The notes under the pieces are model-generated. The model saw only the letters and a program-made list of their open reading frames with translations. It was not told where the DNA came from and did no database searches. A stretch of 64,000 nt of DNA, from the NCBI GenBank assembly GCA_904063045.1, contig CAJFCJ010000015.1:992001-1056000 (forward strand). The letters are read 5' to 3'. Origin of the DNA: Dimorphilus gyrociliatus. Its lineage: Eukaryota > Animalia > Annelida. Shown here piece after piece: positions 8,624 to 43,029 of this stretch (position 1 is its first letter; every line of letters begins with the position of its first letter). The position numbers and the translations under genes are program-made.

Positions 8624-9673
8624 TCAAGTTTGGGATATTTCGCTTGGATATATCCTTGATCTTCTCCTCGTAAAATTGTATATTAAATCAGTGATACTAC
8701 TTCTGCTCCTTTCTGAACGATTCGGAGTAAATTGTGGATCGTAACCAGAGAATGTTGTCATACTTGAAGAGCGTGAGTCGATTTCTTGGCAGTCGCACGA
8801 TTTAATAAATTTTCTATACAATTTCCCAAAAGCTGGTCGAAAGTCTGAAGTTTTAAAAGCGAATATCCATGGATTAACGGCACTGCATATCAAAGATAAT
8901 ACTGATAATAGCATGGACATGTTATTAGAGATTGGTCCAATCTCTGTAACTTGTAAAATATCAATAATTCTAAATGGACACCAAAAAAAGATATATACAG
9001 ATAAAAGGATTGTTAATGCTTTAATACATTTCCTATTTCTAGAACGTTGACGGGCTTCAAGTGGTCCTAAAACAGCTGATTCTACGGCTTCTATAGCTCT
9101 TAACTGAACGGTAACAATTTTCCATATTCGAAAATATACTACAATAAGTACGATAACTGGAGGAATAAATAGAAGATTAAGCGAAATTACAAGGAGAAGG
9201 TCGTTTTCTTTACAGTTATTAGTTAATTTTGAGTAAATGAAAGGCAAAAAAGATAAAGTAATGGCATAAATCCAACAGAAAATAGTTACAATTATAACAC
9301 GAAAAGTTGAAACTACTTGACTGTACGTTAAAGGTGATTTTATAGCCGTATAACGGTCGAAGGCAACTGCCGCAACATTCGTTATACTCAACCCACAAAT
9401 AATTCTGGAAATTGTCAAGGCCAGAGAACAAAGTTTATTCATTTCTTCGTCATTTTCTTTTAGGTAGAATATAAGGGCGACTGGTGCGATTAATCCTATA
9501 CACATATCCGTTACTGCTAACGAAACTATTGAATAATTACTTGTAGTTCGAATCTTGTGAAAGTATGCCATTGAAATTAATACTAAAGAATTCGAGAAGA
9601 ATAATAACATTAATAATAGACCACCGATAGCAACTAAAAAGGAAGAAGCAGAGAACCAAGATGATGATGCCAT
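8624..9673 (-). CDS. Class A GPCR, single coding exon (adenosine/biogenic-amine-receptor-like orphan)
   Basis: 349 aa ORF with 7 hydrophobic segments: LAVTD, FDRY, FFWCPF, NPWIF. An acceptor (ttaccag) lies 6 nt before the ATG and a candidate donor lies near 9845, suggesting a 5'UTR intron. Confidence 0.9.
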   Translation of the reverse strand: MASSSWFSASSFLVAIGGLLLMLLFFSNSLVLISMAYFHKIRTTSNYSIVSLAVTDMCIGLIAPVALIFYLKENDEEMNKLCSLALTISRIICGLSITNVAAVAFDRYTAIKSPLTYSQVVSTFRVIIVTIFCWIYAITLSFLPFIYSKLTNNCKENDLLLVISLNLLFIPPVIVLIVVYFRIWKIVTVQLRAIEAVESAVLGPLEARQRSRNRKCIKALTILLSVYIFFWCPFRIIDILQVTEIGPISNNMSMLLSVLSLICSAVNPWIFAFKTSDFRPAFGKLYRKFIKSCDCQEIDSRSSSMTTFSGYDPQFTPNRSERSRSSITDLIYNFTRRRSRIYPSEISQT

Positions 9674-10294: not shown

Positions 10295-13200
10295 TTATGT
10301 CACTGAATAAAGTGGACTTCCATCTTTTAAACTTACACTTTTTGTTGCCGACATTTTTATATCTGGAAGATGAATAGCCTCTCCTTCAGGCTTATTGGCT
10401 TTATATACTGGATTAATAAAGTCATTACTAACTGACAAACTACTATCTTCAGTAAAATCTTGTGTACTATTTCTAATTGGAGTTGTTCCGTCACTTCGGC
10501 TATAATTCTTCAAGTTCTGCCATTTTCTATTCAGATTCTCACCAACTTCTGGTTTAAAGCGAATTATTGCTAAAATTATAATTACAATAAGGACTAAGCA
10601 GATGATAACTCCAATTGCTATAGCTGCTTTTGAACCACTTGATAAACCTTTTCTATTAGTTGGCTGTACCTGATCTATCGGCTTCGCTAAAAATAAATAG
10701 TGCAGTGTTAATTATTAAGGAATTAGAGCAAATTTCCAATATTACTTGATAATTTTGTTGTTTGAGTTATACGAGTTGTCGATAATTTAAAGGTAGTCGT
10801 TCTTATACTTGTTGTAGTTGGCTTTTTCGTTGTAGTTGGTCGTTTTGTTGTTGTACGAGTTGTAGAAATTATAGTAGTTGTCTTTTTAGGAGTTGTTGGA
10901 GTTGTTGCCTTTTTCGTTGTAGTTTGAGTTGTTGAGACTGTTGTCTTCTTTGGCGTTGTTGGAGTCGTTGGCTTTGAAGTAGTCGTTTTTATTGTAGTCG
11001 AAGTCGGTAGAGTTGTGGTTTTCGTTGTAGGTGTTGTTGCAGATGTTTGATCTTGTGTAGTAAAATCCATAGATAAAGTTGTAGCTTTAGTCACTAAAGG
11101 TGTCGGCCTTGGATCAGTTTTATTTGGTCCAGAAATATCTGAAACACAATAGGAATGGAATAAAATTCTAGGAAACGTTATCTCATACATTCATCATCCG
11201 TGTAAAATCTCCATTGAGCGTCTTCTGACGTAAATCTAATAACGTTTACATCGTGAACTTTATTACTAGGAATTTTCCAATCTATTAAGTATCCATCTGA
11301 ATTTCCTTGCACTTGTAGCCTGTACTCAACGCTTTGAAGAGTTTGAGTAAAGTTCCAATTAATTGTAAAATTCTTCCACTTTTGACAATCTAAGAAATTT
11401 CCAATTATAGAATCTTCGTTGCGTCCTCCAATACTTGAACGTACGGCTAATCGTGAATTTCCATTGATGCCAATAGCCACTTCGTAAGTATTATTTTGTA
11501 AGTTGTTCTCATAGTTTGCTAAAGCTACGAAAGCATTTTTGCAACCTTTAATTGAAGCGATAATATTATTTCTTCCGCTAACTCGAACTGTTTCTTGATT
11601 GCTATAAGAGCTTTTGTCGTTGATTGAGAATTGCACATAATTAACTGTAATTATAGTAAATGCTTTAATATATATAATCTGTTTATTACATAATTAGAAC
11701 AAATAGTATACTTACTTTCGCTTCTTGAAGTTGTCCATACAGCATCTGAATTAGTTATCAAATCAGCAGACGTTATAGTTGCGATGTCGTTAGAAAATGA
11801 TAACAGTGACTTTGATGTATACGCTAAAAATAGATTTTGATTAATTTCTCCGTAGCCAATACGTAGTCCTTTAGACCAAGTCATCCACAGGCGTTTTTCT
11901 CCACAAGTGAATAAATTCGGAGTTTGCACTTTCTTGACTTCCGCTAATACATTGTTTTTTCTTACAAAGAGTATACTTTTATGATCAAAAGTATTCAAAA
12001 TAGCTGATGCCATAATATTTGAATCTTTATCGGTAAAAGTAATGTTTGCTTGTGAGCATGTCTTTATTTTTGTTGTTAATGACTTGGTCTTTACTTCGTA
12101 TGGACCACTTTTCTTAGATTTTGATGTTTTAGAAACTAGTTGATCTTCTTCCAGATTGTTTAAATTCCAAATTCCTTCATTATCTTCAGTTTTAACGCTT
12201 ATTGCTCTGACAACAATTGGTGGATAACGGAAGTAATGCTGAACAAATACGTTCGAATTTAAAACACCTCCTTTACCCAAAGTTATCGATTCTTTATCCC
12301 ATTTAATCCATATTGTAGTCGGTATTGGACTATTTAGAATTTTAATATCGAAAGGATAATAAAAACTATCAGCCTGCTCTTTTATCATAAGTGCACTATT
12401 ATCAAAGCTACCGTAAGAAAGTTCATAAGAAGAATTTCCAGAGATACCTTCACCGTTACTCAGAAGAATTATTGCATTCCTTTCAGCCGATACCTTTAAG
12501 ATTGCATAGTTATTTTCAATACTAGCCCAATATCTTGAATAAACTGACGAGTCAGGTGTATGAACAGTAATAGAGTTGACCTTATACTTCTCGAATCGAA
12601 ATTTTCCAGTGCAAATATCTTGACAGGAAGTACTCATGGCAAAGTGAACGCTTCTCACACGTCTTGTCGCATTTCTAAGAGTTATTATCGGCTGAGAAAC
12701 TCCTCGATTTCCTATACCTAATTGAATCTTGTTTTCCTCCCATGACAGCCAGAATGTTTTATATAGCGTATCACTCAGAATATTAGGAGTTTGGTTTTCC
12801 TCTAAATCGGTAGAATTTATACTTCTCCTTATCACGCTTCGTTGATTGTCTTTTCCGATAATGATTTCGTAGGTTGTCGATGGATTTGGTGGAACTACTC
12901 CAACTTCTTCAGCTAGAGCAATGTACGCATCGCTTTTAGCTCTGATTCTAAATTCCAGACTATTTGTTGATGAAATAATCCAACCGTTTTTATATTCTAA
13001 CGTATTTGATGCTATTATTGTGTGAAAGGGTGATATAGATTCTTTATCTATTAACCAATCAGCGTCATTTCTAGTCGATGTTAGAGAAATGGCTTTTATA
13101 TCTCGGACACTTGAGTTGTAATTAAGAATTAAATCACCCCCAACAGACTCTCCTTTTCCCACACTTATCCTAGTCTTCGTCCATTCAATCCAGAACGGCC

Positions 13201-16200
13201 GACGTTCATCTGCCGATATCAATTGGTCGTTATCAATATCTATCCTCTTCAAGGTATTTGAACTCTCTTTTAATTCTATAGCATTCTTTTCAAGAGATAA
13301 TTTATACATTCCCATTGAAACTCCTAACCATTGATGGAGGCCTAGCATAACAATTTCATCAGATTTGACCTCAAAATTCAAAACGTTTATTATAGGTACA
13401 GTAACGTATGTTTGTAGTGCATTGATATCTGATAGCGTCTTGGCCAGTAGTTGATAATCTGAAAGAAAAGTAATAATAAGCTTCTCTAAGGCGAATAGTT
13501 AAAACAAAAGCACAATTACGAACTAGATGTTGAATGAATTTTCCATTCAGCCTCGAACCTTCGATCACCAGAGAAAGCTAATTCAGTAAATTCGCTTAAA
13601 AAGTTATTGTTTGTTGGAGTCCAAGTTAAAATTGTATTTTCATAGAATATTTCGCCAACTCCAAATTTCAAATCATTTATCCAACTTAGCCAGAATTTTG
13701 TAAACGCTCTACAATTAAGAATATCCGGAGTAACTTCTTCCTTTAGTTCCCGATTGCTTTGAAGGTCTCTAAGAATTGTATCCTTATTGCCATTGGCACC
13801 AATTTCCAGTTCAAGTCGAGCTCTTGTAGGATCTTTTTGAAAAATTCCTACATGACTCTGAGAACAAGAACGTATTGAGAAGAGGGTCTGTTTCGTATTG
13901 TCTATTCTCAAACGATGATTATTATACTGATCATAAACTGCAGGTGATTGTAATCCAAAGATTTTTTCTATATAGAATGAAATTTTGAAGTATGAAATCT
14001 TAAAGACAAAAAGAAATCTTTAAAATATTCTTACCTTGGTCGGTTCCAAAGAAATATTCAGCCTTTACAATCCCATTTGAAGCTAGTGATAAAAAGTTAA
14101 TTGGGAGCATGTCATTGGAGCTTTCAATGAATTCTATCACTGTTTCCCTTCCTACAACATGACCCCTTCCAAAAGATACTATATCGTGTTTCCAACTTAA
14201 CCAGAAAGGACGTTTCTCTTCATCACTTAAGATGTTTGGTGTGGGTGTTCGAACTTCTTCAATATTAGTGAATCTCTCCTTTTTCCTGCGAATTCTTGTC
14301 ACAGTATTTATATAATCACCAATTATTATTTCATAAATGACTTCTCTAGTATTTGTGGCAGTTTGTGATAAGATAAGTCTAGCTCCGTATCTACATCTTA
14401 CCGAGAATAAAAATGTCTTATCAGACGGAGCAGTGAGGTGTGTATCTGGCAAATATGAATTTGGACTTTGATATGAATAAACCTCAGAGGAGAGATGTTT
14501 AGATATCAGCCAAGTTGCCGGCGAAAATATATCTCCAGTAAACGATAAAGCATTAGTATTAATCCAATTTTCAGAATCATCAAAAGTAATAACTTCCTTA
14601 GACCCCCAGCTCCCCCTACCCAACTTAATAACTCCACTCTTCCAACTTATCCAAATTTTCTTCATTTCCTGTGAATTTACCAAATTAACTGTTTCATTGT
14701 GGTCTTTTATAACTTTGCCATCGATTATCTTTTGTACTTTGACGTATGAACCACCGAATGCAGCGCTTTTCATTGTTATTAAATAATAACGATCGGTTAT
14801 ATTTTCAGGATTTTCAATCAAACTTATGTGGCAAACGGGAGAACTGAAGGGTAGTATTGAATAACCAGCTGTGACAGATAGTTCTATATATGGTTGGAGG
14901 GGTATCATCACGAATCTATCTAAATGATAGCTATTATGAGTTCTTGTGGATATAAGTTCCCCATCAGTAATTGGAGGTAATCGCCATTTTCCCATATAGC
15001 CATGTCCAGTTGAAAAAGAAACTACTCTGATGTTATAGAGCGGTGCCATCTTCCAGGACATTAGTTTTCTTACTCCAACCTTAGTACCCTTTCCAAATTC
15101 GAGAAAACCATTTTTCCAGCTTATCCAAAAGTTATTCCATCTCTGACTAGACACAAGGTTGGGATTTCCTGGAACTGAATGTAAAACTGGTCCAGATATA
15201 CCGTTTCTAACTTCAATAACTTCATTTCTAGTACCTCCTATTGACACTTGATATGATCTGTAAGATGGAACTCTTGCGTATTCCTCCAGCAAGAGATAAA
15301 CATATTTTGTGGTGAAAACATCAAACACAATTGAATCTCTATTAACAGTGTGCAGCTGTACTCGATTGAAACTTTTAATTCTTCCAGAATTCCACATTAA
15401 ACTCCTTTCCGATCGCCTTTCAAACTGCCAATAACTAAAGCCAGGTGCAATTTGAACATCAGTGACTTCAAGTGGGAACTCTTCGTCAACATCTATTATT
15501 ATGTTTTGTTCTATATCTGTTCCTATTCCCACGATCCATCTCTTCTTATCCCTATCTTTAGCAATAATCGATACCCAGAAAGGTCTATATTCACTACAAT
15601 CTAATATTTTATCTGTAGAGTTTTGAGCAAGAATCACCTCCGAATTACCGTTTATACGTTTTAAAACTGTCTTGCTGTTTCTATCGGTACCGAAAATAAG
15701 TTTATGTGACGTTTCTTTTTCTGTTGCATTATCTACTTTAAATTCAAGTTGGGCGTTTCCACATGATTTGACTAAGAAACTAAACCAGGGACGCTTTTGC
15801 ATAGACATTGAAAATCCAGACGTTCCAGTAACACTGAGCGTCGATGAAGTGAAATGATCAATGGCCCATTCGGATTCTTTATCATCCGAACTAATAGCTG
15901 TAACCGATGTAATATTATATAAGGAATGACCCCATTCAAGTACAACTTTTTCATTTATTGTTGAAGAAGTACCAAAACTTATCTGATCTATCCAGCTAAT
16001 CCAAAAAAATCTCTTCTCAGTGCAACTTAATATGTTAGGTGTACTTACAGACACGAGCTTTTTATTACCAGCTACATCTTCTAGTTCAGTTTTCTCATTG
16101 TTCCTACCTACGTACAGAATATAAACACCTCCATCATCTATTGTTCTTCCAAAGGTTATTTCTACGTTTTGGCATGCTCTTACAGCAAATAAAATCCAAT

Positions 16201-19200
16201 GTTTGAAAGTTGACTTCATACTGAATGCTACGTCGTTCATTTTTCTAGATAGTTCAGTATATAATGGCATATCTCTTGGGAAATACCACTTTCCAGTACT
16301 ACCAAATCCTGTTGTGATTCCAACTGATCTTATGGTTTGTTGTCTGTGATTGAACCAAGTTATTATAGTTTTTTTGAAAACTTCTGTTCCTTCGCCCACT
16401 TGAACTATGTTATCTCTCCAAGATATCCAAAAAGCTTTGGGCGTGGTTTCATTTAATATTCTCGGGGTTTGTTTAGATCTAACAGCTGGTTGCATTATTC
16501 CCGGTCTTATCTCTGTTTTTGTATTCTTTGCTCCGCCTATTAAGATTTCATATGCTGCGATCTCGTAGTCTCCGGGTATTGATGTTAAAGCTAGGAATGC
16601 ATCATTTTTAGCCTGGACAAAGAAAGTGATATATTCTTCAGACACGGTAAAACTACTTTTTCCGTAAAGATAAATGTTGGGACTTTGAAGCTCAAGATAT
16701 TCACCCTCTGGTAGAATAGGCGTTACTGGAGGTAAAGTTGGAGGAAGTTGAGAAGTAGAATTTTCGAATAAAAATTCCCATGACGCATCAACATTGCTAA
16801 TCATCGAGAGACCGTTAACGTTCGCCTGTTCACCTAAAAATGCTTCAATAACCTTATTATCTCCAGGTTCTTCGCTTCTGCCTAATCTTATATTGGCCCC
16901 ATCCCATGATATCCAAATAGGTATAAATTGATCGCATTCTAAGAACCTTTCATAATTCACTGATTTAATTAGAGTAAGATCTTTGAAAACTTGAACTTGA
17001 TTATCATAGCCCATTCTCACTGAATAAGTCAGGGTTTTTGTTTCACCTGGAATAGTTGACAAAGATATTTGAGCTTCCGAACAAGCTTTTACACCAAATT
17101 GTACGAGTTCTCTGGCTACTCTTGTTACACCAACATACTTTACAAGTTCATTCTTCTTTGTGCTTGTTTGCATCCATCGAATGTCATCTTGAGCTATTTG
17201 CCATCTTCCATCGTTACCAAATCCAGCTGAGAAGGATATGTATGGTATGTTAAGAGAGGCGTTAACGTTATGTGCCATAAAAGGTTCAGAATTATTTTTA
17301 TAGCTTCCAGCTCCAACTGATAGTTCGGAGTTAGAGAATTTTATCCAAAATTTCCTCATTTCATAACAATTTACTATATTTCTAGTTCTTACATGAACAG
17401 CTGTTGAGCCCTGACGCCTTCTTCTAATTTCTGAGAATGTATTTCGCCCACCACCCAATACTATTTCGTACGTGTTTTTATTCGTTACACCTGCTTCCTG
17501 ACTGAGAGCGATGTGGGCATCGTGACAAATTTGAACTCCAAATTCTACATACTCCTTTTGCGGCATGAACCATGTCTTATCATAATTGTATACGTTCGGA
17601 GTGAAAACATCAACAACTTCACCGTAATCTGGACGAATTATTTTCCAGCTGTTATCTATAGGTTTATCTTTTCCAGCTCCCAATGCTATTCCATTTATTG
17701 GAATTATATCATCTTTATCTCTTTTCCAAGAGATAAGTTGATAATTTCCAATTGAAGTACCAAAACCTAACGAAAGATTTTCATCAACCCAGCTCAACCA
17801 GAATGAAGTTTCAGTTAAAGAATTTAATGGATTATTGAAAAATCTTGTCTCCTTTATTTCATTTTTATACGCAATTTCTATTTTACGATTACTGTCAGCT
17901 CCAATGGTGATAGTATAATCCCTTTCTTTTATATTGCCAATAATTGATGCTAAATTCAACTTTGCATATTCATTAGCCTTTACCGAAAAGTAATAGGAAT
18001 CGTATGTTGTTACCCCTAACCAAATACTACCAAAAATTCGATTTTTCCCACCGTACGCCATTAAAAAATTAACTATTTTGAATGAAGGAAAAGCATTATT
18101 TAACTCTAAAAATACACAGTATATTGCAAAATTATTACCGTCGGATGGAAATATTAGCCATCTGGAAGCGTAGGTTTCATATATAGTTTTCAAAATATAT
18201 CCAGTTGCATCCTCAAGACCGAATAAGGTTTTTGCTATTTCATTCTCGTACGGTTCTCCACTGCCCAATCTTATAGAATCTTTATCCCAAGACATCCAGA
18301 ATGTTTTATATCTATTTAAGGCAATAAGTCCTGGAATATTAGCCGTAACGTTGGTAACACCATGAACTTTAATGATTAAGTTATCACTGTTGCTATTTCC
18401 AATAATTGCTTGAGCCAAAGATTGTGTACTGTCCGAAATATTTACTAATTCTATACTCGCTCCTAAATCGGCCTCAAGTTGAAAGATAAGCAAATTTTTA
18501 TTAAACGGAACAATTAATGGACCGTCGTTGTCATTCGTAGTTTGTATTCTATGAACTTCGCCTAAATATTATTAAAAGTTTGCTTTTTAAAATAGGATTA
18601 ATTAGTTAAGATAAGATAAAGATTTTACTGTTAAATTGCATCCATTTAAAGGTGTAACTTGTTGGAGAAGCAAATCTTAGAGCTTTAATGTCCATATTTT
18701 CAGTTGAACGAAATTCTATAACTCTGAATTGAATGTAAAATTCTAATTATTTGAATAATAGTAGTGTTTTTAATAAAGTTACCTTTGTTGTGATACAATT
18801 GTTCCTTTTCCAAAGGAGATAGCGTTGTACTTCCATTCCAACCAGAAATAACGCATTTCATTGCAATCAAGAATACGAGGCGTTGATTGACTAGCAATTG
18901 TTGTACTTTTATCGCTGTGCCGAAGGAATATTGTATATCGATTGGAAGATGTACCTATTCTCAATTCGTAAGTCTGATATCGTAAAATTCCGACAAAAGG
19001 TGCAAATATGATGCTAACTCGGTTACAACTTTTTAATCCAAATACCAATTTAGTCATTGTTGATGGAGTGAACCAACTACCTAAGTCCTTCTCTGCTGTA
19101 GATAAATCCCTTTTAAACGTTATTTCCTGAGCTACTGTTCGCTGTAATTGATAAAATGATATTCTATCCGACTGATCTGAACGTAATTGTGAAAAGAATA

Positions 19201-22200: not shown

Positions 22201-25200
22201 CTTTTCCATCAGATATTTCCTTTCCATATAATTGAAAGAAGTTTAAACTTTTGAAAAACGGATGCAGTCTTTCAAATATTTCTTCCTCTCCAACGTCAAC
22301 TCCTTTCCCCATTCTGAGATAGCCAGTATAATCAGATCCGTTTTTAGTCGAACCCCAAGTTATCTATTTCAAATAGAGACAAATTGATGAGTATGGTTTA
22401 GGAATCTTTTACCAATAATACAAAAATAACTTACCCAAAATTTCTTGCTTATGTCACAATCCAACAGGTTACCAGTTGTAATATCTTCACGTTTACCGTT
22501 ATTATTTGTGCGTATTTCAATTCTAGCCTTATCGGGAAGGTAGTCCAGGGTTATTTCTGCATATTCTTGTCTTTGAAAACCATCTGATACTCTGGCCATT
22601 TCAATAATGGCTTTCATGCAAGCTTGAACCTCAAATACGAGGGAATTTTGATCAGTAAATACGGCCAAGCCATTTTCTCTTCCATTCGAGGTAATTGCAT
22701 AGATTTGGTTGTCTAACATAATGAAACAGAGATAGAGAGTGAAAGAGAGAGAGAGTGTGTGTGTGTTTGTGTGTGTGGGTGTGAAGAGATGTTATATTTG
22801 TAATTTTACTGTATCTTTAAGCTATTAATATACCTTGCATTATATTTGGTAGTGGTGCTGTAAAAAATGATAGAAAAGTGAAGTTTTAAAAGTCAAATTT
22901 GTATTAAAATTTAATGACTCTTACGTAATGTTGGGATGGGAGAATTATCAACTGGTACTGTAAATATAAAGGAAAATATATGCTTAGGCAAAATGAAAAA
23001 GAATGACCAATTTACCAGAGCTATTACCAAAATACCATGTTGCATTTGTGGATGAAGAATGAAAAGAGATGGCGTTAACGGCATTTGCATTGTTAATACT
23101 GCAATTTAATATCGTATTTTCTCCTGTTACTTCACCAACTCCCACTGGAAATATATGAGATAGAAGAATGAAAAGGAAGAATCAATAGCAATAATCTATA
23201 TATCTATATTTATATATTATATTATTATACATGATAATTCTTTATGATGCCATTCAAACCAGAAACTTCTTATTTTGTTTTCATCCAAAAGTGGAGGTGT
23301 ATCCTTAATGCATAGTAATTTTTCGAATGGGCTTTTAATCATCCTCTGAAAGACTTCTATCTTACTCTCTTCATCTCTTGTAATTGATATCTGTTTGAAT
23401 AATTACAAGTGCAAATGTTCACGAAACTATAATTAATATTTATACTCTATACGATAAATCTTCGTAAAAGTTTGGAATGTTGGTTGCAAAAAGATTAATA
23501 GATTTTGATGTTTGTACGTAGAAGACGATACTATTTTTTCCCAATGTACTAATCCATACTTGACCTAATCTATTATTATCGCCAACAGTATTTACACGAG
23601 CAGCAGTTTCTGTTTGAAAAGGGAGGAAAAAAAGAAGTTTTAATCCTATAATAGTCTTTTAAAGTATATTAACCTCCATCCCAGCTTATAGAATATATAG
23701 CTCTTTTATCTCTTACACCAAATGATACTGATTTAAATTCACTGCGATCCTTAACTTTACTAAGAAATATCATCTTATCTCCTTTGAATATAGTAGTCTC
23801 ATTTCCATTATTTTCAATATAAAAGAGACGATCAATTTCACAATCGAGTATTTTTGGAGTTGTTTCTACTTTTCTTTCAATTGTTGATTGTAAGGAAGTT
23901 TTGGTGTTTTTTTCAATTCCTAAATTGGCTTCGAAAGTTGAATTTTCAATCTCAAAATTTGAATACATTCGTATATTTGCATCGTTGCATGCTCTTACGC
24001 CAAATTTTACTTTTGATTCTGTTACGTTCATTCGAATAAAATCAGATTTATCTGAATCAACTGGAGCGATATTTAAAGTGTTGCCGAATGAATTGACAAT
24101 TTCGTAGTCTATTTTATCTTTTTTGTTGGCGAAACCTAAAGAATGGATTGGTATTTCGTGATTATTAGCCTCTAATATTAAATTCTTTCCAATTTCTCCT
24201 CCTTGACCAACGCCAAAATACTTTGAATCATTCCATTCAATCCAAAATGTTCTATAATCAGCACAGAATAGTAAAGATTTTTTTGAAGAAGATGCTATTG
24301 CCGTACTGTTATCTACACGAAATAACTTCGCCTCATTGGAGGAAGAGGTACCAATTTCTAATCTCAGAGAATTTTTAAAATGGATTCTATCTTCTTGACT
24401 CAAGTACAAGATAACACCAGTGCACGCTTTAACAGAAAATACAAAGTTCCGTCTTTCATTTACCATTATCCATGTCCAGGAATAAAATCTCTGATGAGCA
24501 GAAAATGATATTAATTGAACATTGTTGTATGTATATTGCCAATAGGATGAAACAGAATTTTTTGAATGAATCCTTAATAGAAGAGATCGATGATTTCTAT
24601 TTAAATCAGACTTCCATGATACCAAAACTTTATTTTTATTTGTCTGTCCTAATTCAATTAAACCACCTCTCCATGACAGCCAAAATGCATCTAGACGTTC
24701 ACATTTGAGGATATTCGGCGTTACAGTTCTATTCATTACTTCTCCTCCAACAGTTCTCCTTATTTCAGTATTTAGATTATCATTCGTTCCTATTCGAATT
24801 TCAATGTTATCATCTGACAAATCTCCCCTTGTTAATATGATGGAGACATCATCACAAGCTGCTACGTCAAATCTCCAAATATCTTGATTTTCATTGAGAA
24901 CAATTCTATTGCCTTTATCTCGGGATTCAACATATCCATGAACTGTATTAACTCCTGCCTTACTGAATATGAAGAGTCCATTCTTCGAATAAGCAGACAC
25001 CTCTGTTACAAGTAAAGGATTAGAATCTTGCCAGTAAATTAACGGTATCGTCTTTGAAATTCCAACTTGTATAAGACCATTTTCCCAACCAATAGTAATA
25101 TCTCTATATCGATTCGATGAAACAAACGAAAATGGACCAAATCGTTTTAGTTGTTCATTTTTATAAATTTCAACACGAAAACGCTGAAATCGGATTCTAT

Positions 25201-28200: not shown

Positions 28201-31200
28201 TGAGAGGGCCATTTGCAGTATCAGTCGTAAGACGGACATACGCTTCATTCGGAAGTTGAAAATTTACGGCAAAGATCAAAAAGGATCTATGATTTTCATA
28301 TATTGTGGAAGTGACTCCATCCTTGGATAAGAATTCAACATCCATAACTGAAAAAATTTGTATGAAATAAATAAAGAACCAAAGAACTAATGTTCTTACT
28401 AGATGAGCGTTGAAATCTCCATTTAGCTAAACTACTACTACGTAATTCGATCCCTTTTAGTTCGTAAGGAAGTCTAGCATTCAAATTAATTAGTATATCC
28501 TGTCCAATGATTCTTCCTCGTCCTATCATTATACTTGACAACTGTTCATGTTTTATCCAGAAATTCAGTGAATTAGTACAACTAAACATATTAGATTCGT
28601 TGTAGGTTTTGTTGTTTAGTTCGCATCCAGGACAAATTATTTCAATAAAATCCATATTAAATATGATTTTTACATAGTCGCGCTCTAAAAATTTAGGAAA
28701 ACGAGCCAAAATCATTTCTGTTTGATTGCACGACATTATAGATCCATAGAAAGCATTTGAAACCATAGAAACATTTGTGTACATTGACGATTTGGTCTCA
28801 AGAAGGATTGTATTTTCATCTGGTTTAAATATTGGACTCTCTGTTGTTGGGATATCTGAGGGTTTTGTCACGGTGTTTGGATTCGGAGTGGTTCTAGGTG
28901 TAGTAGATATGGATGGGGGCAGTTGGTCATTATGAAACCGCCATTGGGCGAATCCAGATATTCCAATAGAGTTCATGAAAAATGCATCCTTATCTTCAAG
29001 TGTTACCGATATAATTTCCTGATTTGTATCCATTCGACGGAGTAAAATTCGTTTATCATCAGTTGTTAGTAGGAATCTTCTCATCTGACTCGGGCTTATA
29101 ACATTTGATTGGGGAAATGTTCTATTAAAAGACTTGCCGTCAGCTTGTGTATAAATAAACTTGGATTCCTTATTTTGATTTGCTCCCAGGATAATTTTAA
29201 TAAATGGTGGCCTATCGGAGAGTGGTGTACTGGTCAGAATCATGAATATCTCTCGACCGGATCTTACGCTAAATTCTTGACTATTCGAAGATCTATAACC
29301 AATCCAGGTCAGTATTTTATTAACATAAGATCTCGAGAAAAATTCAGCAGCTATAGAGAAAAAATGAAAAATACTGTTATCTTCTCCTAGTTATTGTCTT
29401 TATATATGGAAATAGATAATATACCATTTTCCTTTGGCACTCGCCAATCTGTCTTATTCCCGTTAAATCTAGCATGGCTAAAAGCAGTCATACTATCTTT
29501 TATAGTCAATATTTCTTGACCATCCGAATATTTTCCCGTACCTATGCTTAATATCTCTTTATCCCATATTATCCAAAATGGTCTAAGGATATAAGGATGT
29601 AGGCTAAATGGAATATTCTTTTTAAAAAAAAAATAAACATAAATATTTATCATCAATGAAAAATCTTAATGTATATAATAGGAAATGAAAGGATATTTAC
29701 CTCGGATTTAGTAACATTGCTACCGCTCGTTACAATTAACTGATACTTTTCGAATCGAATGTCGTAGCTCTTGTCAGATTGAATTCTTTCATTTTTTAGA
29801 TTAATAACTGCAGCTTCTTCCGATGAGACTTCAAATTGTAAAAGGTCAGTATTTTTGGGGAAAATTATGCCTGCATATTCAAAATTTTGATGCTCTGCTG
29901 TTATTAGGTAGGATGTTCCGTCTTCGTTGACATAATCTACGATTGCTCTGGCATTTTCAAAAGTACTTACAGTTACCGATGATATGTCTACTATCGATGC
30001 ATCAGTCCACTTTACCAGGACATGTTCATGGCGAACTCCTCCGGTCCCAACCGCAACTAGGTTACTCCTATCCCAAGCTATCCATAAACTCCTTGGCCAC
30101 TTGTTACTTAGTACACTTGTTATATTACTGCTAGCTTTTATATGGCCCCATAAACCTTCCCTATTATCGGCAAAATCAAATACATGATTTAAATTGAATT
30201 GATTAAACAACAGTAACTACCTGATTGATATCTTAGTTTTCAATATTTCAATATGATAGGCATTTCTATCATAAATTCGCGACGTTTCGGCAAGTAGAAT
30301 ATGAAGTTTGTGTTCACTAATTACATTCAAAACTACAAATTTCTCTTTAACAGGAACCCATAAATCTCTTAAATTCATATTTGGCTTAGTTAATTGTTGG
30401 AGATGATTGGCTGTTTGAATAAGATATCTTTTCAAATTCTGTATAATTTAGTAAGAAAGAAAACAAACATTGTTGTTGATCAAACAACCATCGTCCTTGA
30501 TCTGCTTGAGAAGAGGATTGCAATGCAAAAGCAGTATAATTTGTTATGCTTGCTGTAATATCATCCAAAATTCTTAAGAATGGCTCTCCAATACCAATTT
30601 TTAAAACATCAGATTCCCATTCTATCCAGAACTGTTGCTGAACATTGCAACTTAAAAAGATATTTGAACTGATAAAATAAGGATTTTGCTGGTCTGATAA
30701 GCGTACGATAATATTATCAGTATTTCCAACACCTAATAAAATAATTGATTATATTTGAATAGATTAATTACTAAGCTTACTAAATTCAATACTATCCGAA
30801 TTCGTATTTAATGGAGGTGACCGCAAAAGTAGTAGTTTAACGCTTTGACAAACCATCAAAGAAAATGTTATATAGTTCCTTTGTCTGGGATCTAGGTATA
30901 CAACGTTTGAATTGTTTGAAGGTACACCAGTCCAGAGGGAGTAGTAGGGATCTAAGTATATTTATAATGTATTATTAATTAAATAGTCATTGTTTCTTGA
31001 TTAGATATTTAATTTACTTCTATAGCCATTCAATTTCCATTGAACTGTATTGTCGTATATACCAGAGGCGAGTCCAATACCTCTTATACCATTCCATAAT
31101 TGTTTCTTATCGGGCTCGTAATGAGCTAAAACCACACTACCAACAGATCTGCCTTTTCCGAATAGAATTATTTCAGAGTCGTCTTCTTTTTTCTTCTGTT

Positions 31201-34200
31201 GGATTGTAATCGATACTTAAATGTAAAGTGAACTACGTTAACTTTTACTTGAAATTGCACCCAAAAATCCGTATAAAAGGCTTGTTCATTATAGCAGTTG
31301 AGAAATCTTCTTCCTCGTTTCTCAAAGATAACAACTCCGTTCAAAGATAGGGTAACTCTTGTCACGGAAACTTTTACAACTAGTGAATCCCTGCTTACAA
31401 TACCCTTATATTTCATTAAAACAACTTGAATTCCCTGACAACTTTTGGCACTGTTTTCAGAGATAGAATTATAATGTTTAAATAGTAATATATTTTAAAT
31501 AAAATTGAATAAAAACCTAAAGATAGAAGATGTTTTATGTTTCATTGAGTACCAGAATTCATCAAGTCTAGCGGTTTTAGTTACTACAGTTATCCAATGA
31601 TCTGAAAATTGATAAGTGCTTAATTCGATTTTACTGTTATGTTACTAGAGTAAAATTTCACCTTTTTCTTTTCGAATCCTCCAAGAGGACGGAGGTATAG
31701 CCATATCAACCGCATTTTCAGCAAAGAAACTATATGCTATTAAATGTTCTCTTTCCTGTATCGGCGTTTCTATTAGCTGCCTGTCTCCATAATTTGGACC
31801 CTGACCAACTTTCAGCATATTATCTGACCAAGTTATCCAAAAATAATGGAATTCATCGCAAGATAACATATCAACCTGTGTTTTCTCCTTTACTAAATTA
31901 TTTGCTTTAAATATTTGTATCTTTGTATTATCATTTCCTCCAAAGATAATCTATGCAAAAAGGAATATTCTTCTTATTAAATATAAAATATATATCTATA
32001 ATACCTGATACGTAAACGCATTAAGAATATCAACAGTTGTCTCATGTAGTTGTAGGTAGGCTTCTTTACAGGATCTAACAGCGACAATTATTGCTGTTTG
32101 ACCTCTATCGAGTGATACTATAATATTAAATGCAGGAGCTAAAGGTGAATTGATAATTGATGCCACATCCTCTAAATTAAAGTATACATAAATGGATTTA
32201 TTTGTCTGATAATAGAGGGAAAATGCTCTAACCGTAATACAAATCATTGTCAAAGATCCAATCGCCTGTATTATTTTTAGATGACAAAGCTATTTTATTT
32301 GATGTTAAACCTGCTCTATCTGGTTTAAAGATAATATTAAGTTTTTCTCCAGAGCCGACATTTTGACCCTTTCCACCCCAAAGTACATTAGAGTCCCACA
32401 TAAGCCAATAGTCGGAGTAGCTTGTGTCTGATAAAAGAATATCTGTACTAAGACCCTTTACAACATTTCCATCAGGAGGTGATAAAAAGAAAAGTCCACC
32501 AGACGTGTAATTAACTAAATTATGAATGAAATAAAGGAACTGTTTAGTCGAACTCTTGTTTTATTCAACTTTGATTAAAATAACTGACCTCTTCCTCTTT
32601 TATTTATTTCAAATTCCTTTGCAAATGACTCCTCTGAAATATCTCTATTAGTCGAAATCACTAAGGACGCTATATCCTTAGACTTTACTCTAAAGTTTAA
32701 GCCTCCTCTATTAGGTACCGATATCCAAGGTGAACTATCATACGAATTAAGATTTGAGGAATGATGATAAAACGACGAAACTAAGAGTTAATGGAAGAAA
32801 GTAGTTGAAATTAGAATAGAATATATTAATTTCCTATTTACCTATATGTTCATTAATAATCCATTCACCAATGTTTCTTTCTCCAGTTGCAAAAGATGCA
32901 GCAGTAATTGATAACTAATTGAAAATATTGAAATAAATTCAACCATATATAATATGGGTAAAACTTTACAAACCTTTAGAAAATCTCCTTCGATAAGAGT
33001 ATTTTGTGACGTCGTAGAACCTCTTCCCAATTTAACAGTATACATTGACGAGTTGAAACCCTTATCGTAGTAACTAATCCAAAACTTTCTTGGTTCCATA
33101 CAATTCAATAATGGATATCCAAATAATTTTGTTGTAATATTAACACTATCGTTTCCCTCAAATCTTTTAATTGATATTTTTCCATTGGTATCATCGATAA
33201 TGAATTCGTAAGAATTTTTGTCAGATTGTTTAAGTTGTTCGCTTAAAACTAATTTATTGATTACGTAATTGGTTTTTAACTAAAGTAATTATGTTTTTTA
33301 AATACTAACTTATGGAAGCAGAGTGGCAAGTTTTAATTGAAAATACAGCAATGTTTGAACCGAGAAGAATCCATGATGATTTATATTTGTCTATTAAATT
33401 TGAATTTGGCTTAGTTGGTTGAGTTCTTATTAAAATTCCATCATCTAAAAAGATTAAAGTATTATATAAAGACGTACACATCGTCTATATTTCTAATAGA
33501 TTTACCAGATTTCTCTTCAATACTCCATGATAAAAAGATATTTTGTTGAGTATTTTTGCCTGAAAAGGATACGGCTGATATTTCGAAAGCATTTTCCATT
33601 CGATGGTTGAAAATACTTTAAAAGTGATAATAAACTCTTGTGAATTATGTTAATTTGACAAATTATTGATAATACTGACATATTTAGACCCGGAGACTTG
33701 TCCGTCCCAAAATAAATTACTCCATTCGACCATGCAATCCAAAAATATCTATATACTGATGGATCTAAGACTTGACCTATCCAACGGCTTTCAATAACAA
33801 CTTCTCCCTTCCTCAATTGGACTCCTGTATTCCTTCGAGATCCAAGTACTATTTCGTAAACATCTACAGAAGCTATTCCTTGCCATCTTGCTGCTAATAC
33901 AAGAGCTTCGGCATTTCCTTTCAATCCAAATACAACGTAATGCCTCTTTGATCTAACATTTAACCAAACTTCATCATAGATAGGCCTCTGTGTGGATAAT
34001 GTTTGAATCCTTTCTCCTAGCGCTGTCATATGAGATAAAGTATTACATATATATTAAATTGATACTATTTGCTCTCTAACCATTATCTCTATCGAATTTC
34101 CACTGAATATATCCTCCCTGTTGTTTATCTACATTCCTAACATAAAGCTTATCAGGTCGAAATATTTCATCAGTACTCCAAGTAGCAATTACAAATTGGT

Positions 34201-35936
34201 CTTCATCTAATCCTTTACCAAAGGTAATATTTTTATTAGACCAACTTAACCATAGAGATCTATATTTAAAACATTCTAACGCCTTTTCGTTAGTATCTGA
34301 AGACAGATTCTTATATTCCGTATTATTGGCTAAAAACATTAAATCTAGGGATATTTTTCCATTAACAGAGCTAATTTTCAATCGAAACTTTACTTTCTCA
34401 TCTAAAAGTTATTGAGAAAATTTGTAGTTTAGATTATTGATATGTAAATTATCATTAACCTGGTTCATTAAAGAGATCAATTGAAACATTTGTATTACAA
34501 GATCGTATGTCAAATGGAAAGAAAGTCTTATATTGTACATCGATGGATGAACTTGTTGAGATGGTATCCCTATCGGTTTTAATGGTCCATTGATCGCCTA
34601 TAATAGAGAGACGTATAATATTCCAACTAGAGAGAATTAAATTCATAAAAGAAAATCGAACCTCTGGAATCTGGAAAATCCCAAATTGCAGTTTTATTCT
34701 CAGATGAATAGACAGAAACATATTTAGGTTTAAAATCAAAATCTTTCGTCCAACTTAGAATATTTCCTCTTTTGTTTAATGAACCCAATTCAAAAGTACC
34801 TTCTCTACCATTCCAATAGAGATTAAAGTCTCTTTTTGAAAAAATAGAACAATTTAATAACGTACTATAAGAATTAATAGAGTTTAATCTTTACCTATTT
34901 TCATCGCATGATAGAATGTGTGTAGTTGATATAAAAGTATAATCCATAGTTCTATTAAATCTAAATCCGCTTTTCATATTATCCTTTCCAATAATAATTT
35001 CCCTTATACTATTTAATTGATCTTCCTCTTCCGATAATAAAATTAATACATCGCTGCAGGCTTTTACTCTGGACGTATATTAAGAGTTGAATATAGATAG
35101 AAAGTATATTAATATAACCTAAAAAGTTACCTAAAATAGAATGTATGCGTAGTACGTTCAGGAATGAAATTTCTCCATATTGTTTTATATAATGGTCTCT
35201 TTGACCCAGTCTTTAAAAATACTTCCTTTGCTACAAACCAATGTATATATATACATATGTAAATAATTGCTTGTTTTTACCTACTATAGTCTTTAAGAAC
35301 TTTCCATTGTCCATCAGAACCAAAACCAGTATTTAGAGCAACTCCAGCAACTTGAAATTTAATCCCTTCATCAATCATTTTACCTATTTGATTTTTACCG
35401 AATTCACTACCCCTTCCAATAACAAGTGTTTTATTTGACCAAGTAATCCAGTAGGTTAAAAACTTATTCTTATCTAATAAATTAGGAATAAAATCGTTGA
35501 TTGGTTGACTTGTTTCATTTCTCATAAATAGTTTCCTTCCTCTGCTACCGCCAATAATAATTTCGTAATATCTTCCAGTTTTTAACTTGTTAAAATCAGG
35601 ATTTGAGGGAAATAATAAATGAGCATCATTTTCAGCTTTAATTTTAATAACTAGTCTTTCGAAATCAGTTGTAAAGAACGCATAATCGTAGACGTCATCA
35701 TGATTTGGCGTAAAAAATAAATACTCTATTTCTATAACAGATTGAAAAGACAATAAATAAAGGAAGAGATCGTTAAGTATCAATAACTTACCTTTCGAAT
35801 CTTCTTGTCCAAATACTAGATTACCTGTAAGAAATAACAATTTACAAAAGAGAATTAAATCGATAATTAATTGATCTAATTTACTTTTTATTAATACAAA
35901 AAATGAACATAACGCTATTAAAAAGCGTAAAATCAT
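10295..35936 (-). CDS. Giant type I membrane protein: signal peptide, about 45-50 tandem FAMeT-like (Methyltransf_FA) repeats, Thr-rich stalk, TM helix, FxNPxY tail
   Basis: A ~150-aa unit recurs throughout: F.V.AC..A.I.L..YEI.IG...N..S.IR..T..IL.C....FWISW....I..G.G...W.....S...G.W. The best copies (e.g. QAKNDAFLAL..YEILIGGAKNTKTEIR..FWISW..TTGFGSTGKW) match the arthropod FAMeT/CPAMD8 domain. Checked junctions are in frame (35.1-35.9k, 32.9k, 25.6k, 22.7-23.1k, 18.6-18.8k, 14.0k, 13.5k, 11.7k, 11.15k, 10.7k). No internal signal peptide or TM segment was seen. Not every junction was checked, so a split into more than one gene is not formally excluded. Confidence 0.8.
10790..11070 (-). repeat. 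Thr/Lys/Pro-rich mucin-like coding repeat (juxtamembrane stalk of the giant protein)
   Basis: KPTTPTTPKKTTVSTTQTTTKKATTPTTPKKTTTIISTTRTTTKRPTTTKKPTTT contains an internal imperfect duplication. Confidence 0.85.
22728..22783. repeat. Compound (GA)n(GT)n microsatellite in an intron of the giant gene
   Basis: gagagagagtgtgtgtgtgt seen directly. Confidence 0.9.
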
Positions 35937-36234
35937 TTCTATATTAGGTTTTCCTTTTGCAGAATATCAGTGTAAATTGTTTTTTAACTGACTTCTTTTA
36001 ATAATAAAAATGGAGAATGATTAAAAACAATTACGGTTCGAAATATTTGTGGGCGTTCTTTTTGCGATAAGACTAATTAGTATACTGTTATATTGATTAT
36101 GATGTAGTGATCTCTTTTTTGAATAATTCTATTTTATTCTCTTTACAAATTCTTAACGATTTAATAATTAATATGATAAAATATGCCTTTAGTTACTTAT
36201 TAAGCAATTGTCAATATTATGATGGTTTTAACAA

Positions 36235-42936: not shown

Positions 42937-42971
42937 TTTGCCTGAAATTAAAATTAGTTAACTCTCCAAAA

Positions 42972-43029
42972 CACGTGCTTTCGCAGTGGACTGCCTAAGT
43001 AGTAGTATGTCGCGATTAAAAATGGCGGC
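42972..43029. promoter_or_regulatory. E-box (CACGTG, 42972-42977) and YY1-like motif (AAAATGGCGGC, about 43019-43029) near the RSL1D1 5' end
   Basis: Exact motif matches. Both motifs are typical of ribosome-biogenesis and housekeeping promoters. Function untested. Confidence 0.4.

What the first reader, a model, noticed from the sequence alone, without database searches (positions are those of the whole stretch)
10295..35936. Giant single-pass receptor built from about 45-50 tandem 'farnesoic acid methyltransferase' domains
Seen: about 30 ORF fragments share one ~150-aa repeat and splice in frame wherever checked, from a signal peptide (MILRFLIALCSFFVLIKSNLVFG/QE) to a mucin stalk, TM helix and short tail. 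The length estimate (about 22 kb coding, 7,000+ aa) comes from 10 repeats per 1,497 aa and typical intron sizes. Established: Methyltransf_FA domains normally occur in one or two copies (arthropod FAMeT, CPAMD8), lack a SAM-binding motif, and have disputed enzyme activity. Inference: a megalin-sized extracellular array shows the domain is a binding module, and this protein is an undescribed multivalent receptor (scavenging, feeding or mucus, nephridial uptake, or immune recognition).
Basis: partly seen in the sequence, partly recalled or inferred. Interest (0 to 1): 0.92.

Follow-up and report, generated by a model that had tools for sequence, protein, structure and literature searches.

The report
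Giant 48-module lectin-fold membrane protein
A tiny marine worm's compact genome holds one 25.6-kb gene for a 7,423-residue cell-surface protein made of 48 different copies of the misnamed "farnesoic acid methyltransferase" domain, which folds like a sugar-binding lectin, so the protein is probably a binding or uptake receptor rather than an enzyme.

Summary
On the minus strand, 35936 to 10295 is one gene. My model has 54 exons and 53 GT-AG introns (median 61 nt), a 22,272-nt reading frame and 7,423 residues.

The protein has a signal peptide, 48 tandem Methyltransf_FA (PF12248) modules, a Thr/Pro stalk, one membrane helix and an 88-residue tail containing FINPVY.

A transcriptome run confirms 17 introns. 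One of its contigs is 20,168 nt long, and a junction-spanning contig links it to the 5' part. A related species has a collinear gene at about 59% identity.

The module is an all-beta sandwich (pLDDT 94). It nearly superimposes on the CPAMD8 domain and resembles galectin and CBM66 folds, not a SAM methyltransferase.

Among the relatives found, no other protein has more than 17 copies, and none combines a long array with a signal peptide, membrane helix and NPxY tail. The 48 modules are only 19% identical to each other, yet each is conserved between species.

The receptor function is inferred, not shown. Endocytic receptor and adhesion or matrix anchor remain close rivals.

The scan had already noted the FxNPxY motif on this same window.

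Verdict: a new variant of a known kind, of moderate to high interest.

The parts
35885..35936 (-). Exon 1: start codon and first 17 codons of the signal peptide (MILRFLIALCSFFVLIK)
   Evidence: First in-frame ATG after a stop at 35967-35969. The donor AAA|GTAAAT was chosen by the DP model. No RNA contig covers this exon.
35792..35824 (-). Exon 2 (33 nt): end of the signal peptide and the predicted cleavage site VFG|QE
   Evidence: Canonical AG acceptor and AAG|GTAAGT donor. An X2 contig ends 9 nt into this exon, and its match stops exactly at the acceptor of intron 35791-35732. Similarity to the orthologue starts at the next exon, at EIEYLF.
11211..35675 (-). Array of 48 tandem Methyltransf_FA (PF12248) modules, period about 147 aa, interrupted by 49 short introns
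   Evidence: Pfam. Own repeat profile on the ORFs and on the spliced model. 17 introns confirmed by RNA. Collinear orthologue for model residues 2079-7145.
28833..28919 (-). Internal Thr/Pro-rich hinge between repeats 12 and 13
   Evidence: A 60-aa gap between repeat matches, with the sequence PPSISTTPRTTPNPNTVTKPSDIPTTESP.
14035..18072 (-). Largest exon (4,038 nt), holding repeats 34-41 whole and most of repeat 42
   Evidence: Open frame. 59% identical to the orthologous 1,331-aa ORF, aligned without large indels.
10628..11210 (-). Membrane-proximal stalk, residues 7156-7313, 56% Thr/Ser/Pro (mucin-like, presumably O-glycosylated); includes introns 11188-11139 and 10745-10687
   Evidence: Read directly. 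Composition. The orthologue continues with the same SGPN.TDP start and a TTKP-repeat stalk.
10562..10627 (-). Single transmembrane helix AAIAIGVIICLVLIVIIILAII (residues 7314-7335)
   Evidence: The only internal hydrophobic segment above threshold in 7,400 aa. Coordinates.
10298..10561 (-). Cytoplasmic tail, 88 aa
10403..10420 (-). FINPVY, an FxNPxY motif of the LDL-receptor type, 47 residues after the TM helix
   Evidence: Read directly. Present in 0.07% of 200,000 shuffles of the tail, and NPxY in 1.8%. It is the only sorting motif found there.
10295..10297 (-). Stop codon TAA
9833..10294 (-). Inferred 3' UTR of about 460 nt; end approximate
   Evidence: The length of the 20,168-nt X2 contig, walked along the final exon model from window 32511, ends at about 9833. 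The next gene, an intronless GPCR, starts at 9673.

Best explanation
SHOWN. One gene on the minus strand (35936-10295) makes one very long mRNA of about 22.3 kb coding sequence. It encodes a 7,423-residue type-I membrane protein. The order of parts is: signal peptide, 48 tandem Methyltransf_FA modules, Thr/Pro-rich stalk, one TM helix, and an 88-residue tail with FINPVY. Each module is predicted to be a compact galectin/CBM-like beta-sandwich, not a SAM-methyltransferase fold. Neighbouring modules are joined by short linkers of low confidence. The modules are only about 19% identical to one another, but each is about 59% identical to its counterpart in a related species.

INFERRED. The protein is not catalytic. 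It is a long, flexible, heavily glycosylated chain of 48 individually specialised binding modules, held off the cell surface on an O-glycosylated stalk.

Most likely function (about 40%): a multi-ligand uptake (scavenger-type) receptor that works like the LDL-receptor/megalin class. Ligands, probably glycans or glycoconjugates, would bind different modules. The FxNPxY tail would recruit PTB-domain adaptors of the Dab2/ARH/Numb type for clathrin-mediated endocytosis.

Sub-probabilities: the architecture claim about 0.9; binding module rather than enzyme about 0.8; specifically endocytic about 0.4.
For: Single gene and mRNA:
- One open frame across 54 exons.
- 15 RNA joints and a 20,168-nt transcript contig. 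Its length requires it to run from 32511 through the stop codon.
- Junction letters link the 5' contigs to that contig.

Domain identity: PF12248 at E 7e-138.

Fold:
- AF2 pLDDT 94 and pTM 0.89.
- CPAMD8 residues 956-1091 at TM 0.89.
- Galectin-7 at Z 11.7 and CBM66 at Z 11.1, over the whole domain.

Flexible linkers: three-repeat model with pTM 0.57 and linker segments below pLDDT 50.

Constraint:
- Orthologue collinear over more than 5,000 residues.
- 59% identity without large indels, against 45% for the neighbouring PARG.
- Positions that vary among paralogues are still 52% identical between orthologues.

Extracellular binding context for the domain:
- Co-occurrence with WSC, Sushi and F5/8-C domains in P0009.
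- Sea-star adhesive footprint proteins (PMC9382459).
- An abalone shell protein with a signal peptide (PMC6003135).

Receptor reading: the order stalk, TM helix, FxNPxY tail is the same as at the C-terminus of the LDL receptor (established knowledge). The motif occurs in 0.07% of shuffled tails.
Against: - No ligand, localisation or uptake data exist.
- A shared fold shows no function. Identity to galectins is only 5-8%, and no galectin sugar-binding signature was detected.
- FxNPxY is a single short motif. Its conservation could not be tested, because all orthologue contigs break in the stalk and the tail exon found no homologue.
- NPxY also serves cytoskeletal anchoring, as in integrin beta tails.
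- The best-documented extracellular contexts of the domain are adhesive and matrix proteins, not receptors.
- Exon 1 with the signal peptide has no RNA support.
- The 5' 3.4 kb lies on contigs of about 10-fold lower mean depth than the 3' 20 kb. A shorter, more abundant isoform is therefore not excluded.
Confidence: 0.5

Rival explanations
1. Adhesion or matrix-anchoring protein. The 48-module chain binds secreted mucus, the cuticle or apical extracellular matrix, or the substratum. The NPxY tail ties it to the cytoskeleton through talin-, kindlin- or PTB-type adaptors. It would work like a giant membrane anchor of the Dumpy kind, or like the cohesive proteins of temporary adhesives.
For: - FAMeT domains occur in six sea-star adhesive footprint proteins and in mollusc shell-matrix proteins.
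- The P0009 mosaic combines them with WSC, discoidin and Sushi adhesion modules and a TM helix.
- Great length and a flexible beads-on-a-string build suit tethering.
- NPxY is also the integrin-beta anchoring motif (established knowledge).
- The animal named in earlier notes glides on cilia and mucus.
Against: - The sea-star proteins are cysteine-rich and secreted, with 1-2 FAMeT domains among other modules. This protein has 0.85% Cys and nothing but FAMeT modules.
- The F at position -2 of FxNPxY matches the LDL-receptor internalisation form of the motif.
- There are no expression data.
Confidence: 0.3
2. Passive surface barrier or glycocalyx spacer. A very long, heavily N- and O-glycosylated membrane protein whose modules serve mainly as rigid, protease-resistant spacers, as in membrane mucins, without specific ligands.
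For: 73 N-glycosylation sequons in the ectodomain and a 158-aa Thr/Ser/Pro stalk, plus an internal Thr/Pro hinge.
Against: Spacer modules should tolerate change. Here each module keeps its own sequence between species, including surface-type positions that vary among paralogues (52% identity). The alignment has no indels over 1,331 residues and no loss or gain of repeats.
Confidence: 0.1
3. A true enzyme array: the modules methylate farnesoic acid or another small molecule, as the Pfam name suggests.
For: Only the family name and the original crustacean reports.
Against: - All-beta lectin-like fold with no Rossmann or SAM-binding fold.
- Extracellular location behind a signal peptide, where SAM is not available (inference).
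- FAMeT activity has never been reliably shown, and fly mutants keep normal hormone levels (PMC10015273).
Confidence: 0.02
4. Not one gene: several adjacent genes, a decaying pseudogene array, or an assembly artefact of a repeat.
For: - 36 of the 53 introns are predicted only.
- 5' contigs have about 10-fold lower mean depth than the 3' contig.
- Some X2 contigs leave the locus with letters found nowhere in the window.
Against: - No stop codon in 22,272 nt.
- A single 20-kb RNA contig, and a junction-spanning link at 32589/32514.
- The repeats are only 19% identical, so they cannot be collapsed or mis-joined by an assembler.
- The same order of repeats is found in an independent assembly of another species.
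Confidence: 0.03

Closest known systems
Methyltransf_FA domain of human CPAMD8 (Q8IZJ3, residues 956-1091)
   Same: Same domain family. Best structural match to a single repeat: TM 0.89, rmsd 1.7 A, 29% identity. Also extracellular.
   Different: CPAMD8 has one copy, inserted in an alpha-2-macroglobulin/complement-type protein with a Kazal domain. It has no array, TM helix or NPxY tail.
Lingula anatina uncharacterised protein LOC106167937 (XP_013402294.1, 3,814 aa; a cluster member of 4,785 aa)
   Same: The largest other array found: 14-17 PF12248 copies and no other confidently matched domain (one marginal Luciferase hit, no passing stretch). A lophotrochozoan.
   Different: - No signal peptide or TM helix in the model, and a 1,000-aa domain-free N-terminus.
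- Its repeats are 41% identical to each other, and each is closest to another Lingula repeat. It is therefore an independent, younger amplification, not an orthologue.
- Uncharacterised.
LDL receptor / megalin (LRP2) class of endocytic receptors
   Same: It would work like them. The layout is a large modular ligand-binding ectodomain, an O-glycosylated Ser/Thr-rich stalk next to the membrane, a single TM helix and a short tail. The tail carries FxNPxY: FINPVY here, FDNPVY in the LDL receptor (the latter from my own knowledge). The size is in the megalin range.
   Different: Not a member. It has no LDL-A repeats, EGF modules or YWTD propellers, and the ectodomain is filled entirely by PF12248 modules.
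Arthropod FAMeT proteins
   Same: Same Pfam domain.
   Different: They are small proteins with 1-4 copies, usually followed by DUF3421 (PMC10015273). The protein here has 48 copies, no DUF3421 and a TM helix, and is predicted to be secreted.
Sea-star footprint proteins Sfp1/3/4a/5/7/8 and abalone shell 'Uncharacterized protein 5' (P86728)
   Same: FAMeT domains in secreted, extracellular adhesive or matrix proteins. P86728 is the second-best structural match, TM 0.78.
   Different: One or two copies, mixed with EGF, vWF, hyalin, WAP and other modules. The gland-type-1 (AC1) Sfps are cysteine-rich. No membrane anchor is described.
Galectin carbohydrate-recognition domains and CBM66
   Same: Same overall beta-sandwich over the whole domain: Z 11.7, rmsd 2.6 A over 117 of 132 residues for galectin-7, and Z 11.1 for CBM66.
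   Different: 5-8% identity and no Pfam galectin hit. Sugar binding is untested.

Membership tests
Methyltransf_FA (PF12248) domain family | Match to the Pfam model above its gathering score | tested here: met
   454 bits against a cut-off of 24.2 for the 1,497-aa ORF, and above the cut-off in five other ORFs.
Methyltransf_FA (PF12248) domain family | Same three-dimensional fold as recognised members | tested here: met
   TM 0.89 to the CPAMD8 domain, 0.78 to Haliotis P86728 and 0.68 to At2g30600.
Arthropod FAMeT proteins | Small protein with 1-4 PF12248 copies, either two in tandem or followed by DUF3421 | tested here: not met
   48 copies. No DUF3421 hit in the six repeat-bearing ORFs scanned. 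Every residue outside the signal peptide, stalk, TM helix and tail is accounted for by repeats and linkers of at most 87 aa. Architecture as defined in PMC10015273.
SAM-dependent methyltransferases | Rossmann-like alpha/beta fold with a SAM-binding motif | tested here: not met
   All-beta sandwich of 10 strands and one short helix. All structural neighbours are lectins, CBMs or GH16 enzymes.
LDL receptor family | LDL-receptor class A repeats, EGF modules and YWTD beta-propellers in the ectodomain | tested here: not met
   Only PF12248 was found. There is no room for other domains.
LDL receptor family | Single TM helix and a short tail with FxNPxY | tested here: met
   TM helix at residues 7314-7335 and FINPVY at 7383-7388.
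LDL receptor family | The tail motif binds PTB adaptors and drives clathrin-mediated endocytosis | not testable with these tools
   Needs binding and uptake experiments. Conservation in the orthologue could not be obtained.
Galectins | Galectin-type beta-sandwich fold | tested here: met
   Z 10.4-11.7 over 115-123 residues.
Galectins | Galectin sequence signature (Pfam Gal-bind_lectin) and beta-galactoside binding | tested here: not met
   No Gal-bind_lectin hit in the Pfam scans, and 5-8% identity. Sugar binding itself is not testable here.
Membrane-tethered mucins | Ectodomain dominated by Pro/Thr/Ser tandem repeats, usually with a SEA domain | tested here: not met
   The PTS-rich part is only 158 aa plus a hinge of about 30 aa in an ectodomain of 7,313 aa. 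No SEA hit.

The most novel reading that the evidence does not exclude
This is the founding example of a new class of giant endocytic receptor. It is analogous to megalin but built entirely from galectin-fold 'FAMeT' modules, each with its own conserved ligand site. By extension, the Methyltransf_FA domain would be a lectin-like or ligand-binding module throughout animals. Arthropod 'FAMeT' would then be a binding protein rather than a hormone-synthesis enzyme, and PF12248 hits would be invalid as markers of methyl-farnesoate signalling.
Probability: 0.2. Interest if true: 0.8.

Novelty: new variant of a known kind. Interest (0 to 1): 0.58.

Why it matters
1. It is by far the largest array of this domain found in a search of 1.84 billion representative proteins: 48 copies against 17 or fewer. 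It is also the only long array found with the full set of a signal peptide, stalk, TM helix and FxNPxY tail. It sits in a genome otherwise known for compaction, where a 25.6-kb gene that is 87% coding stands out.

2. It adds strong indirect evidence to an old dispute. The 'farnesoic acid methyltransferase' domain is a lectin-like extracellular beta-sandwich, not a methyltransferase fold. This matters in practice, because annelid and other invertebrate studies count PF12248 hits as evidence of methyl-farnesoate hormone synthesis (PMC12023644).

3. The 48 modules differ from one another as much as from bacterial copies, yet each is conserved between species. That makes the protein a natural library of 48 variants of one fold, suitable for finding out what the domain binds.

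Tried and rejected
The middle of the gene therefore has no direct read evidence.
- First DP model: intron 19045-18974 was rejected because retaining it raises the repeat score by 29 bits. Intron 26749-26699, and with it a 10-nt exon, was rejected because the orthologue conserves the removed peptide. I suspected that the 33-nt and 24-nt micro-exons near 22900 were artefacts, but the orthologue conserves both.
- I at first read as showing that a 5' contig carried 248 foreign letters upstream of 35733. On re-reading the minus-strand record coordinates, only 9 letters lie upstream, so there is no evidence against exon 1.
- The search for exon 1 in RNA runs returned only DNA runs, and with 15 sampled words it is uninformative.
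- The TM-plus-tail exon found no homologue, and every orthologue contig ends inside the stalk repeats. Tail conservation is therefore untested.
- A profile search of PDB sequences found nothing.
- An Rfam scan of the locus found nothing.
- The first three-repeat alignment (A2) was out of register because of overlapping rows and was discarded.
- The PARG neighbour could not place the organism. The best named hits were a cestode, a rotifer and a mollusc at 31-42% identity. The species name rests on earlier notes of this scan.
Full report
**1. What is in the sequence**

The minus strand between 35936 and 10295 carries a dense series of open reading frames, the longest of 1,497 codons. Pfam assigns every long ORF to PF12248, Methyltransf_FA. 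The 1,497-aa ORF scores 454 bits (E 7e-138) with nine matched stretches. Five other ORFs score between 32 and 149 bits, against a cut-off of 24.2.

I built a 123-position repeat profile from the window itself and ran it over all six frames. It gave 57 hit pieces. All lie on the minus strand between 35675 and 11211, and none lie elsewhere in the 64 kb. The pieces fall in 31 ORF fragments.

Neighbouring fragments are often split by a single in-frame stop or overlap by a few bases. This made sense once the introns proved to be about 60 nt long.

**2. RNA evidence and the gene model**

Two public runs hold the locus. Run X2 behaves as a transcriptome. Its contigs skip 48-66 nt with CT..AC ends on the plus strand, which is GT..AG on the minus strand, at 15 listed places. 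One contig of 20,168 nt ends at window 32511 and runs towards the 3' end.

I trained a simple splice-aware dynamic programme on these 15 introns. It used codon log-odds from the long ORFs and donor and acceptor matrices, and it forbade stop codons. It found one uninterrupted frame from the ATG at 35936 to the TAA at 10297-10295, and it re-used all 15 known introns.

Two predicted introns were then removed:
- 19045-18974, because keeping that sequence raises the repeat score by 29 bits.
- 26749-26699, because the peptide it would delete is conserved in the orthologue.

Two micro-exons of 33 and 24 nt that I had doubted are conserved in the orthologue, so I kept them.

The final model has 54 exons and 53 GT-AG introns of 48-121 nt (median 61). 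The CDS is 22,272 nt, encoding 7,423 residues of roughly 0.8 MDa, and 87% of the 25.6-kb gene is coding.

Two introns that were not in the training set are confirmed by loose-end letters reported:
- The eight letters before 32589 equal window 32507-32514. A 5' contig therefore crosses intron 32588-32515 into the exon where the 20-kb contig begins.
- The eleven letters behind 34837 equal window 34901-34911.

In total, 17 of the 53 introns have RNA support, and the 5' and 3' parts are physically linked. Walking 20,168 exonic bases from 32511 along the model ends at about 9833. The contig must therefore include the stop codon and about 460 nt of 3' UTR.

Remaining weaknesses:
- Exon 1 has no RNA coverage, and exon 2 has only 9 nt.
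- The 5' contigs have about ten-fold lower mean depth than the 3' contig. This may be 3' bias, or it may point to a shorter, more abundant isoform.

**3. The protein**

The N-terminus reads MILRFLIALCSFFVLIKSNLVFG|QE. It has one basic residue, a 12-residue hydrophobic core, and Val and Gly at positions -3 and -1. This is the pattern of a cleavable signal peptide (rule from established knowledge, since no predictor was available).

48 repeat matches follow at a period of about 147 residues, and 43 of them are near full length. Splicing restores complete repeats across most junctions, which supports the model independently. The largest stretches outside repeat matches are a Thr/Pro hinge between repeats 12 and 13 and the divergent first halves of two repeats. 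There is no room for any other domain.

After the last repeat come:
- a 158-residue stalk that is 56% Thr/Ser/Pro;
- a single TM helix, residues 7314-7335, the only internal hydrophobic segment in the protein;
- an 88-residue tail.

The tail contains FINPVY. FxNPxY occurs in 0.07% of 200,000 shuffles of the tail, and no other common sorting motif is present. Two earlier first-reader notes on this window had flagged the motif, and I confirmed it. The ectodomain has 73 N-glycosylation sequons and only 0.85% Cys.

**4. Intron pattern**

37 of the 53 introns are phase 1, and many of them fall in the linkers between modules. This is the usual signature of duplicated extracellular modules.

Several internal positions recur in different repeats: profile position 38 in phase 0 four times, position 13 in phase 2 twice, and position 97 in phase 2 twice.

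The 5' third has about two introns per repeat. The 3' half has exons of 4,038, 1,930, 1,743 and 1,308 nt. That pattern would fit 3'-biased intron loss, which is an inference.

**5. Fold**

AlphaFold2 on repeat 35, with a 62-row alignment, gives pLDDT 94.3 and pTM 0.89. The model is an all-beta domain of ten strands and one short helix.

Among reviewed AlphaFold models, the best matches are:
- the Methyltransf_FA domain of human CPAMD8 (TM 0.89, rmsd 1.7 A, 29% identity);
- abalone shell 'Uncharacterized protein 5' (TM 0.78);
- the N-terminal domain of Arabidopsis At2g30600 (TM 0.68);
- then galectins.

Among solved structures, the neighbours are galectins, GH16 glucanases and CBM66. VIA-align gives Z 11.7 and rmsd 2.6 A over 117 of 132 residues for galectin-7, and Z 11.1 for CBM66. 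No solved structure matches by sequence.

The module therefore belongs to the concanavalin-A-like lectin/glucanase fold class and has nothing of a SAM-dependent methyltransferase.

A three-repeat model has confident modules, but the linkers fall below pLDDT 50 and pTM is 0.57. I read this as beads on a string. The alignment was shallow, so this is weak evidence.

**6. Relatives**

An exhaustive HMMER search of 1.84 billion representative proteins gave 1,547 hits. Counting repeats with my profile gave:
- the largest other arrays are in the brachiopod Lingula anatina, with 14 copies in XP_013402294.1 and 17 in a 4,785-aa cluster member;
- everything else has nine or fewer.

The smaller arrays include secreted proteins of bacterial type, one of them from a Dependentiae MAG. 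A 7,735-aa EukProt protein mixes five copies with WSC, Sushi and F5/8-C domains and a TM helix.

None of the many-repeat relatives (7-17 copies) has a signal peptide together with a TM helix and an NPxY tail. The Lingula model shows neither a signal peptide nor a TM helix.

Inside those other proteins the repeats are similar to one another: Lingula 41%, a moth protein 56%, and others 60-94%. No Lingula repeat is closer to a repeat of this protein than to its own paralogues. Those arrays are therefore independent and younger.

Here the 48 modules average 18.8% identity (maximum 36%). Adjacent modules are no more alike than distant ones, and the figure is about the same as their identity to bacterial copies.

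**7. Orthologue**

Logan assemblies of another sample (SRR23372229) hold a genomic contig whose ORFs are collinear with model residues 2079-7145. HSP breaks fall at my intron positions, including two introns that are 'optional' here but obligatory there. The contig then continues into a Thr/Pro stalk before it ends. A third sample holds a 64%-identical first repeat, and the similarity begins exactly at my exon 3.

The same sample keeps the neighbouring genes in the same order: L1-domain gene, PARG, COG3.

Identities between the two species are:
- 59% for the long exon, with 1,331 residues aligned without large indels;
- 45% for PARG;
- 75% for the L1-domain protein.

Positions that vary freely among paralogues are still 52% identical between orthologues. 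The array is thus old, stable in copy number and under purifying selection module by module. That speaks against a mere spacer, and against simple multivalency for a single ligand.

**8. Organism**

The neighbours are ordinary animal genes: three intronless rhodopsin-type GPCRs, PARG, COG3 and a tetraspanin. PARG has no close annotated relative.

Earlier follow-up notes on other pieces of this genome name it Dimorphilus gyrociliatus. The median intron of 61 nt here fits the published median of 66 bp for that 73.8-Mb genome (PMC7854359). I could not verify the name directly.

**9. Function**

Shown: the architecture, the fold, expression as a very long mRNA, and conservation.

Inferred: a non-catalytic binding role. 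The reasons are the lectin/CBM fold, the extracellular position, and the company the domain keeps:
- sea-star adhesive footprint proteins (PMC9382459);
- abalone shell matrix (PMC6003135);
- CPAMD8 (PMC9363628);
- the WSC/Sushi/discoidin mosaic.

FAMeT's enzymatic role has never been reliably shown (PMC10015273).

Between the two main readings, I put an endocytic multi-ligand receptor slightly ahead, at about 0.4. The C-terminal layout (O-glycosylated stalk, TM helix, short tail with an FxNPxY almost identical to the LDL receptor's FDNPVY) is that of the LDL-receptor class. That comparison comes from my own knowledge.

An adhesion or matrix anchor is close behind, at about 0.3, because the documented extracellular uses of the domain are adhesive, and because NPxY also serves anchoring.

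The protein is not a member of the LDL-receptor family, of the galectins, of the arthropod FAMeT proteins or of the membrane mucins. In each case a defining feature was tested and not met (see the membership table).

**10. Verdict**

It is a new variant of a known kind: a known domain in an unprecedented, conserved 48-module membrane-anchored array. No paper in the held library describes such an array. Interest is moderate to high rather than exceptional, because giant modular surface proteins are common in invertebrates and the function is still untested.

Noticed in passing
window 8624-9673 (-), 51113-52243 (-), 58117-59106 (-): Three intronless rhodopsin-type GPCR genes (7tm_1, with Srsx/Srw-like hits). 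The first starts only about 160 nt downstream of the inferred 3' end of the giant transcript.
   Followed up: partly
window 41701-48777 and L004: The gene order L1-domain protein (-), PARG (+), COG3 (-) is conserved in the related species' contig. Identities are 75% for the L1-domain protein and 45% for PARG.
   Followed up: partly
window 31516, 35090, 35093, 35265 (run X2): X2 contigs leave the locus at these places with 255 or more letters that occur nowhere in the 64-kb window. Mean contig depth is 70-76 over 34900-35299, while the flanking exons sit near 5. This could reflect chimeric contigs, paralogous transcripts or alternative exons elsewhere. Unexplained.
   Followed up: partly
window 32511/32589: Contig mean depth steps about ten-fold, from 81 to about 5-7, between the 3' 20 kb and the 5' 3.4 kb of the same gene. 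This could be 3' bias or a shorter major isoform starting near 32500.
   Followed up: no
window 22713-22833: The longest intron (121 nt) holds a (CA)n/(CT)n microsatellite.
   Followed up: no
window 10295-35936, intron distribution: There are about two introns per repeat in the 5' third but very long exons (up to 4,038 nt) in the 3' half, a pattern that would fit 3'-biased intron loss. 37 of the 53 introns are phase 1.
   Followed up: partly
run X1 (coral metagenome metatranscriptome): A coral metatranscriptome holds spliced fragments of this transcript, one contig at 99% identity or more and one at 95-99%. The animal, or a very close relative, was therefore present in that coral sample.
   Followed up: no
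P0082, P0027, P0029, P0041, P0049, P0148: Proteins of 1,700-2,600 aa carry 7-9 Methyltransf_FA copies. Most have signal-peptide-like N-termini, though P0082 does not. One is from a Candidatus Dependentiae MAG and the others are from metagenome or Logan contigs. The domain thus also forms arrays in bacteria-like sources, possibly symbionts of eukaryotes.
   Followed up: partly
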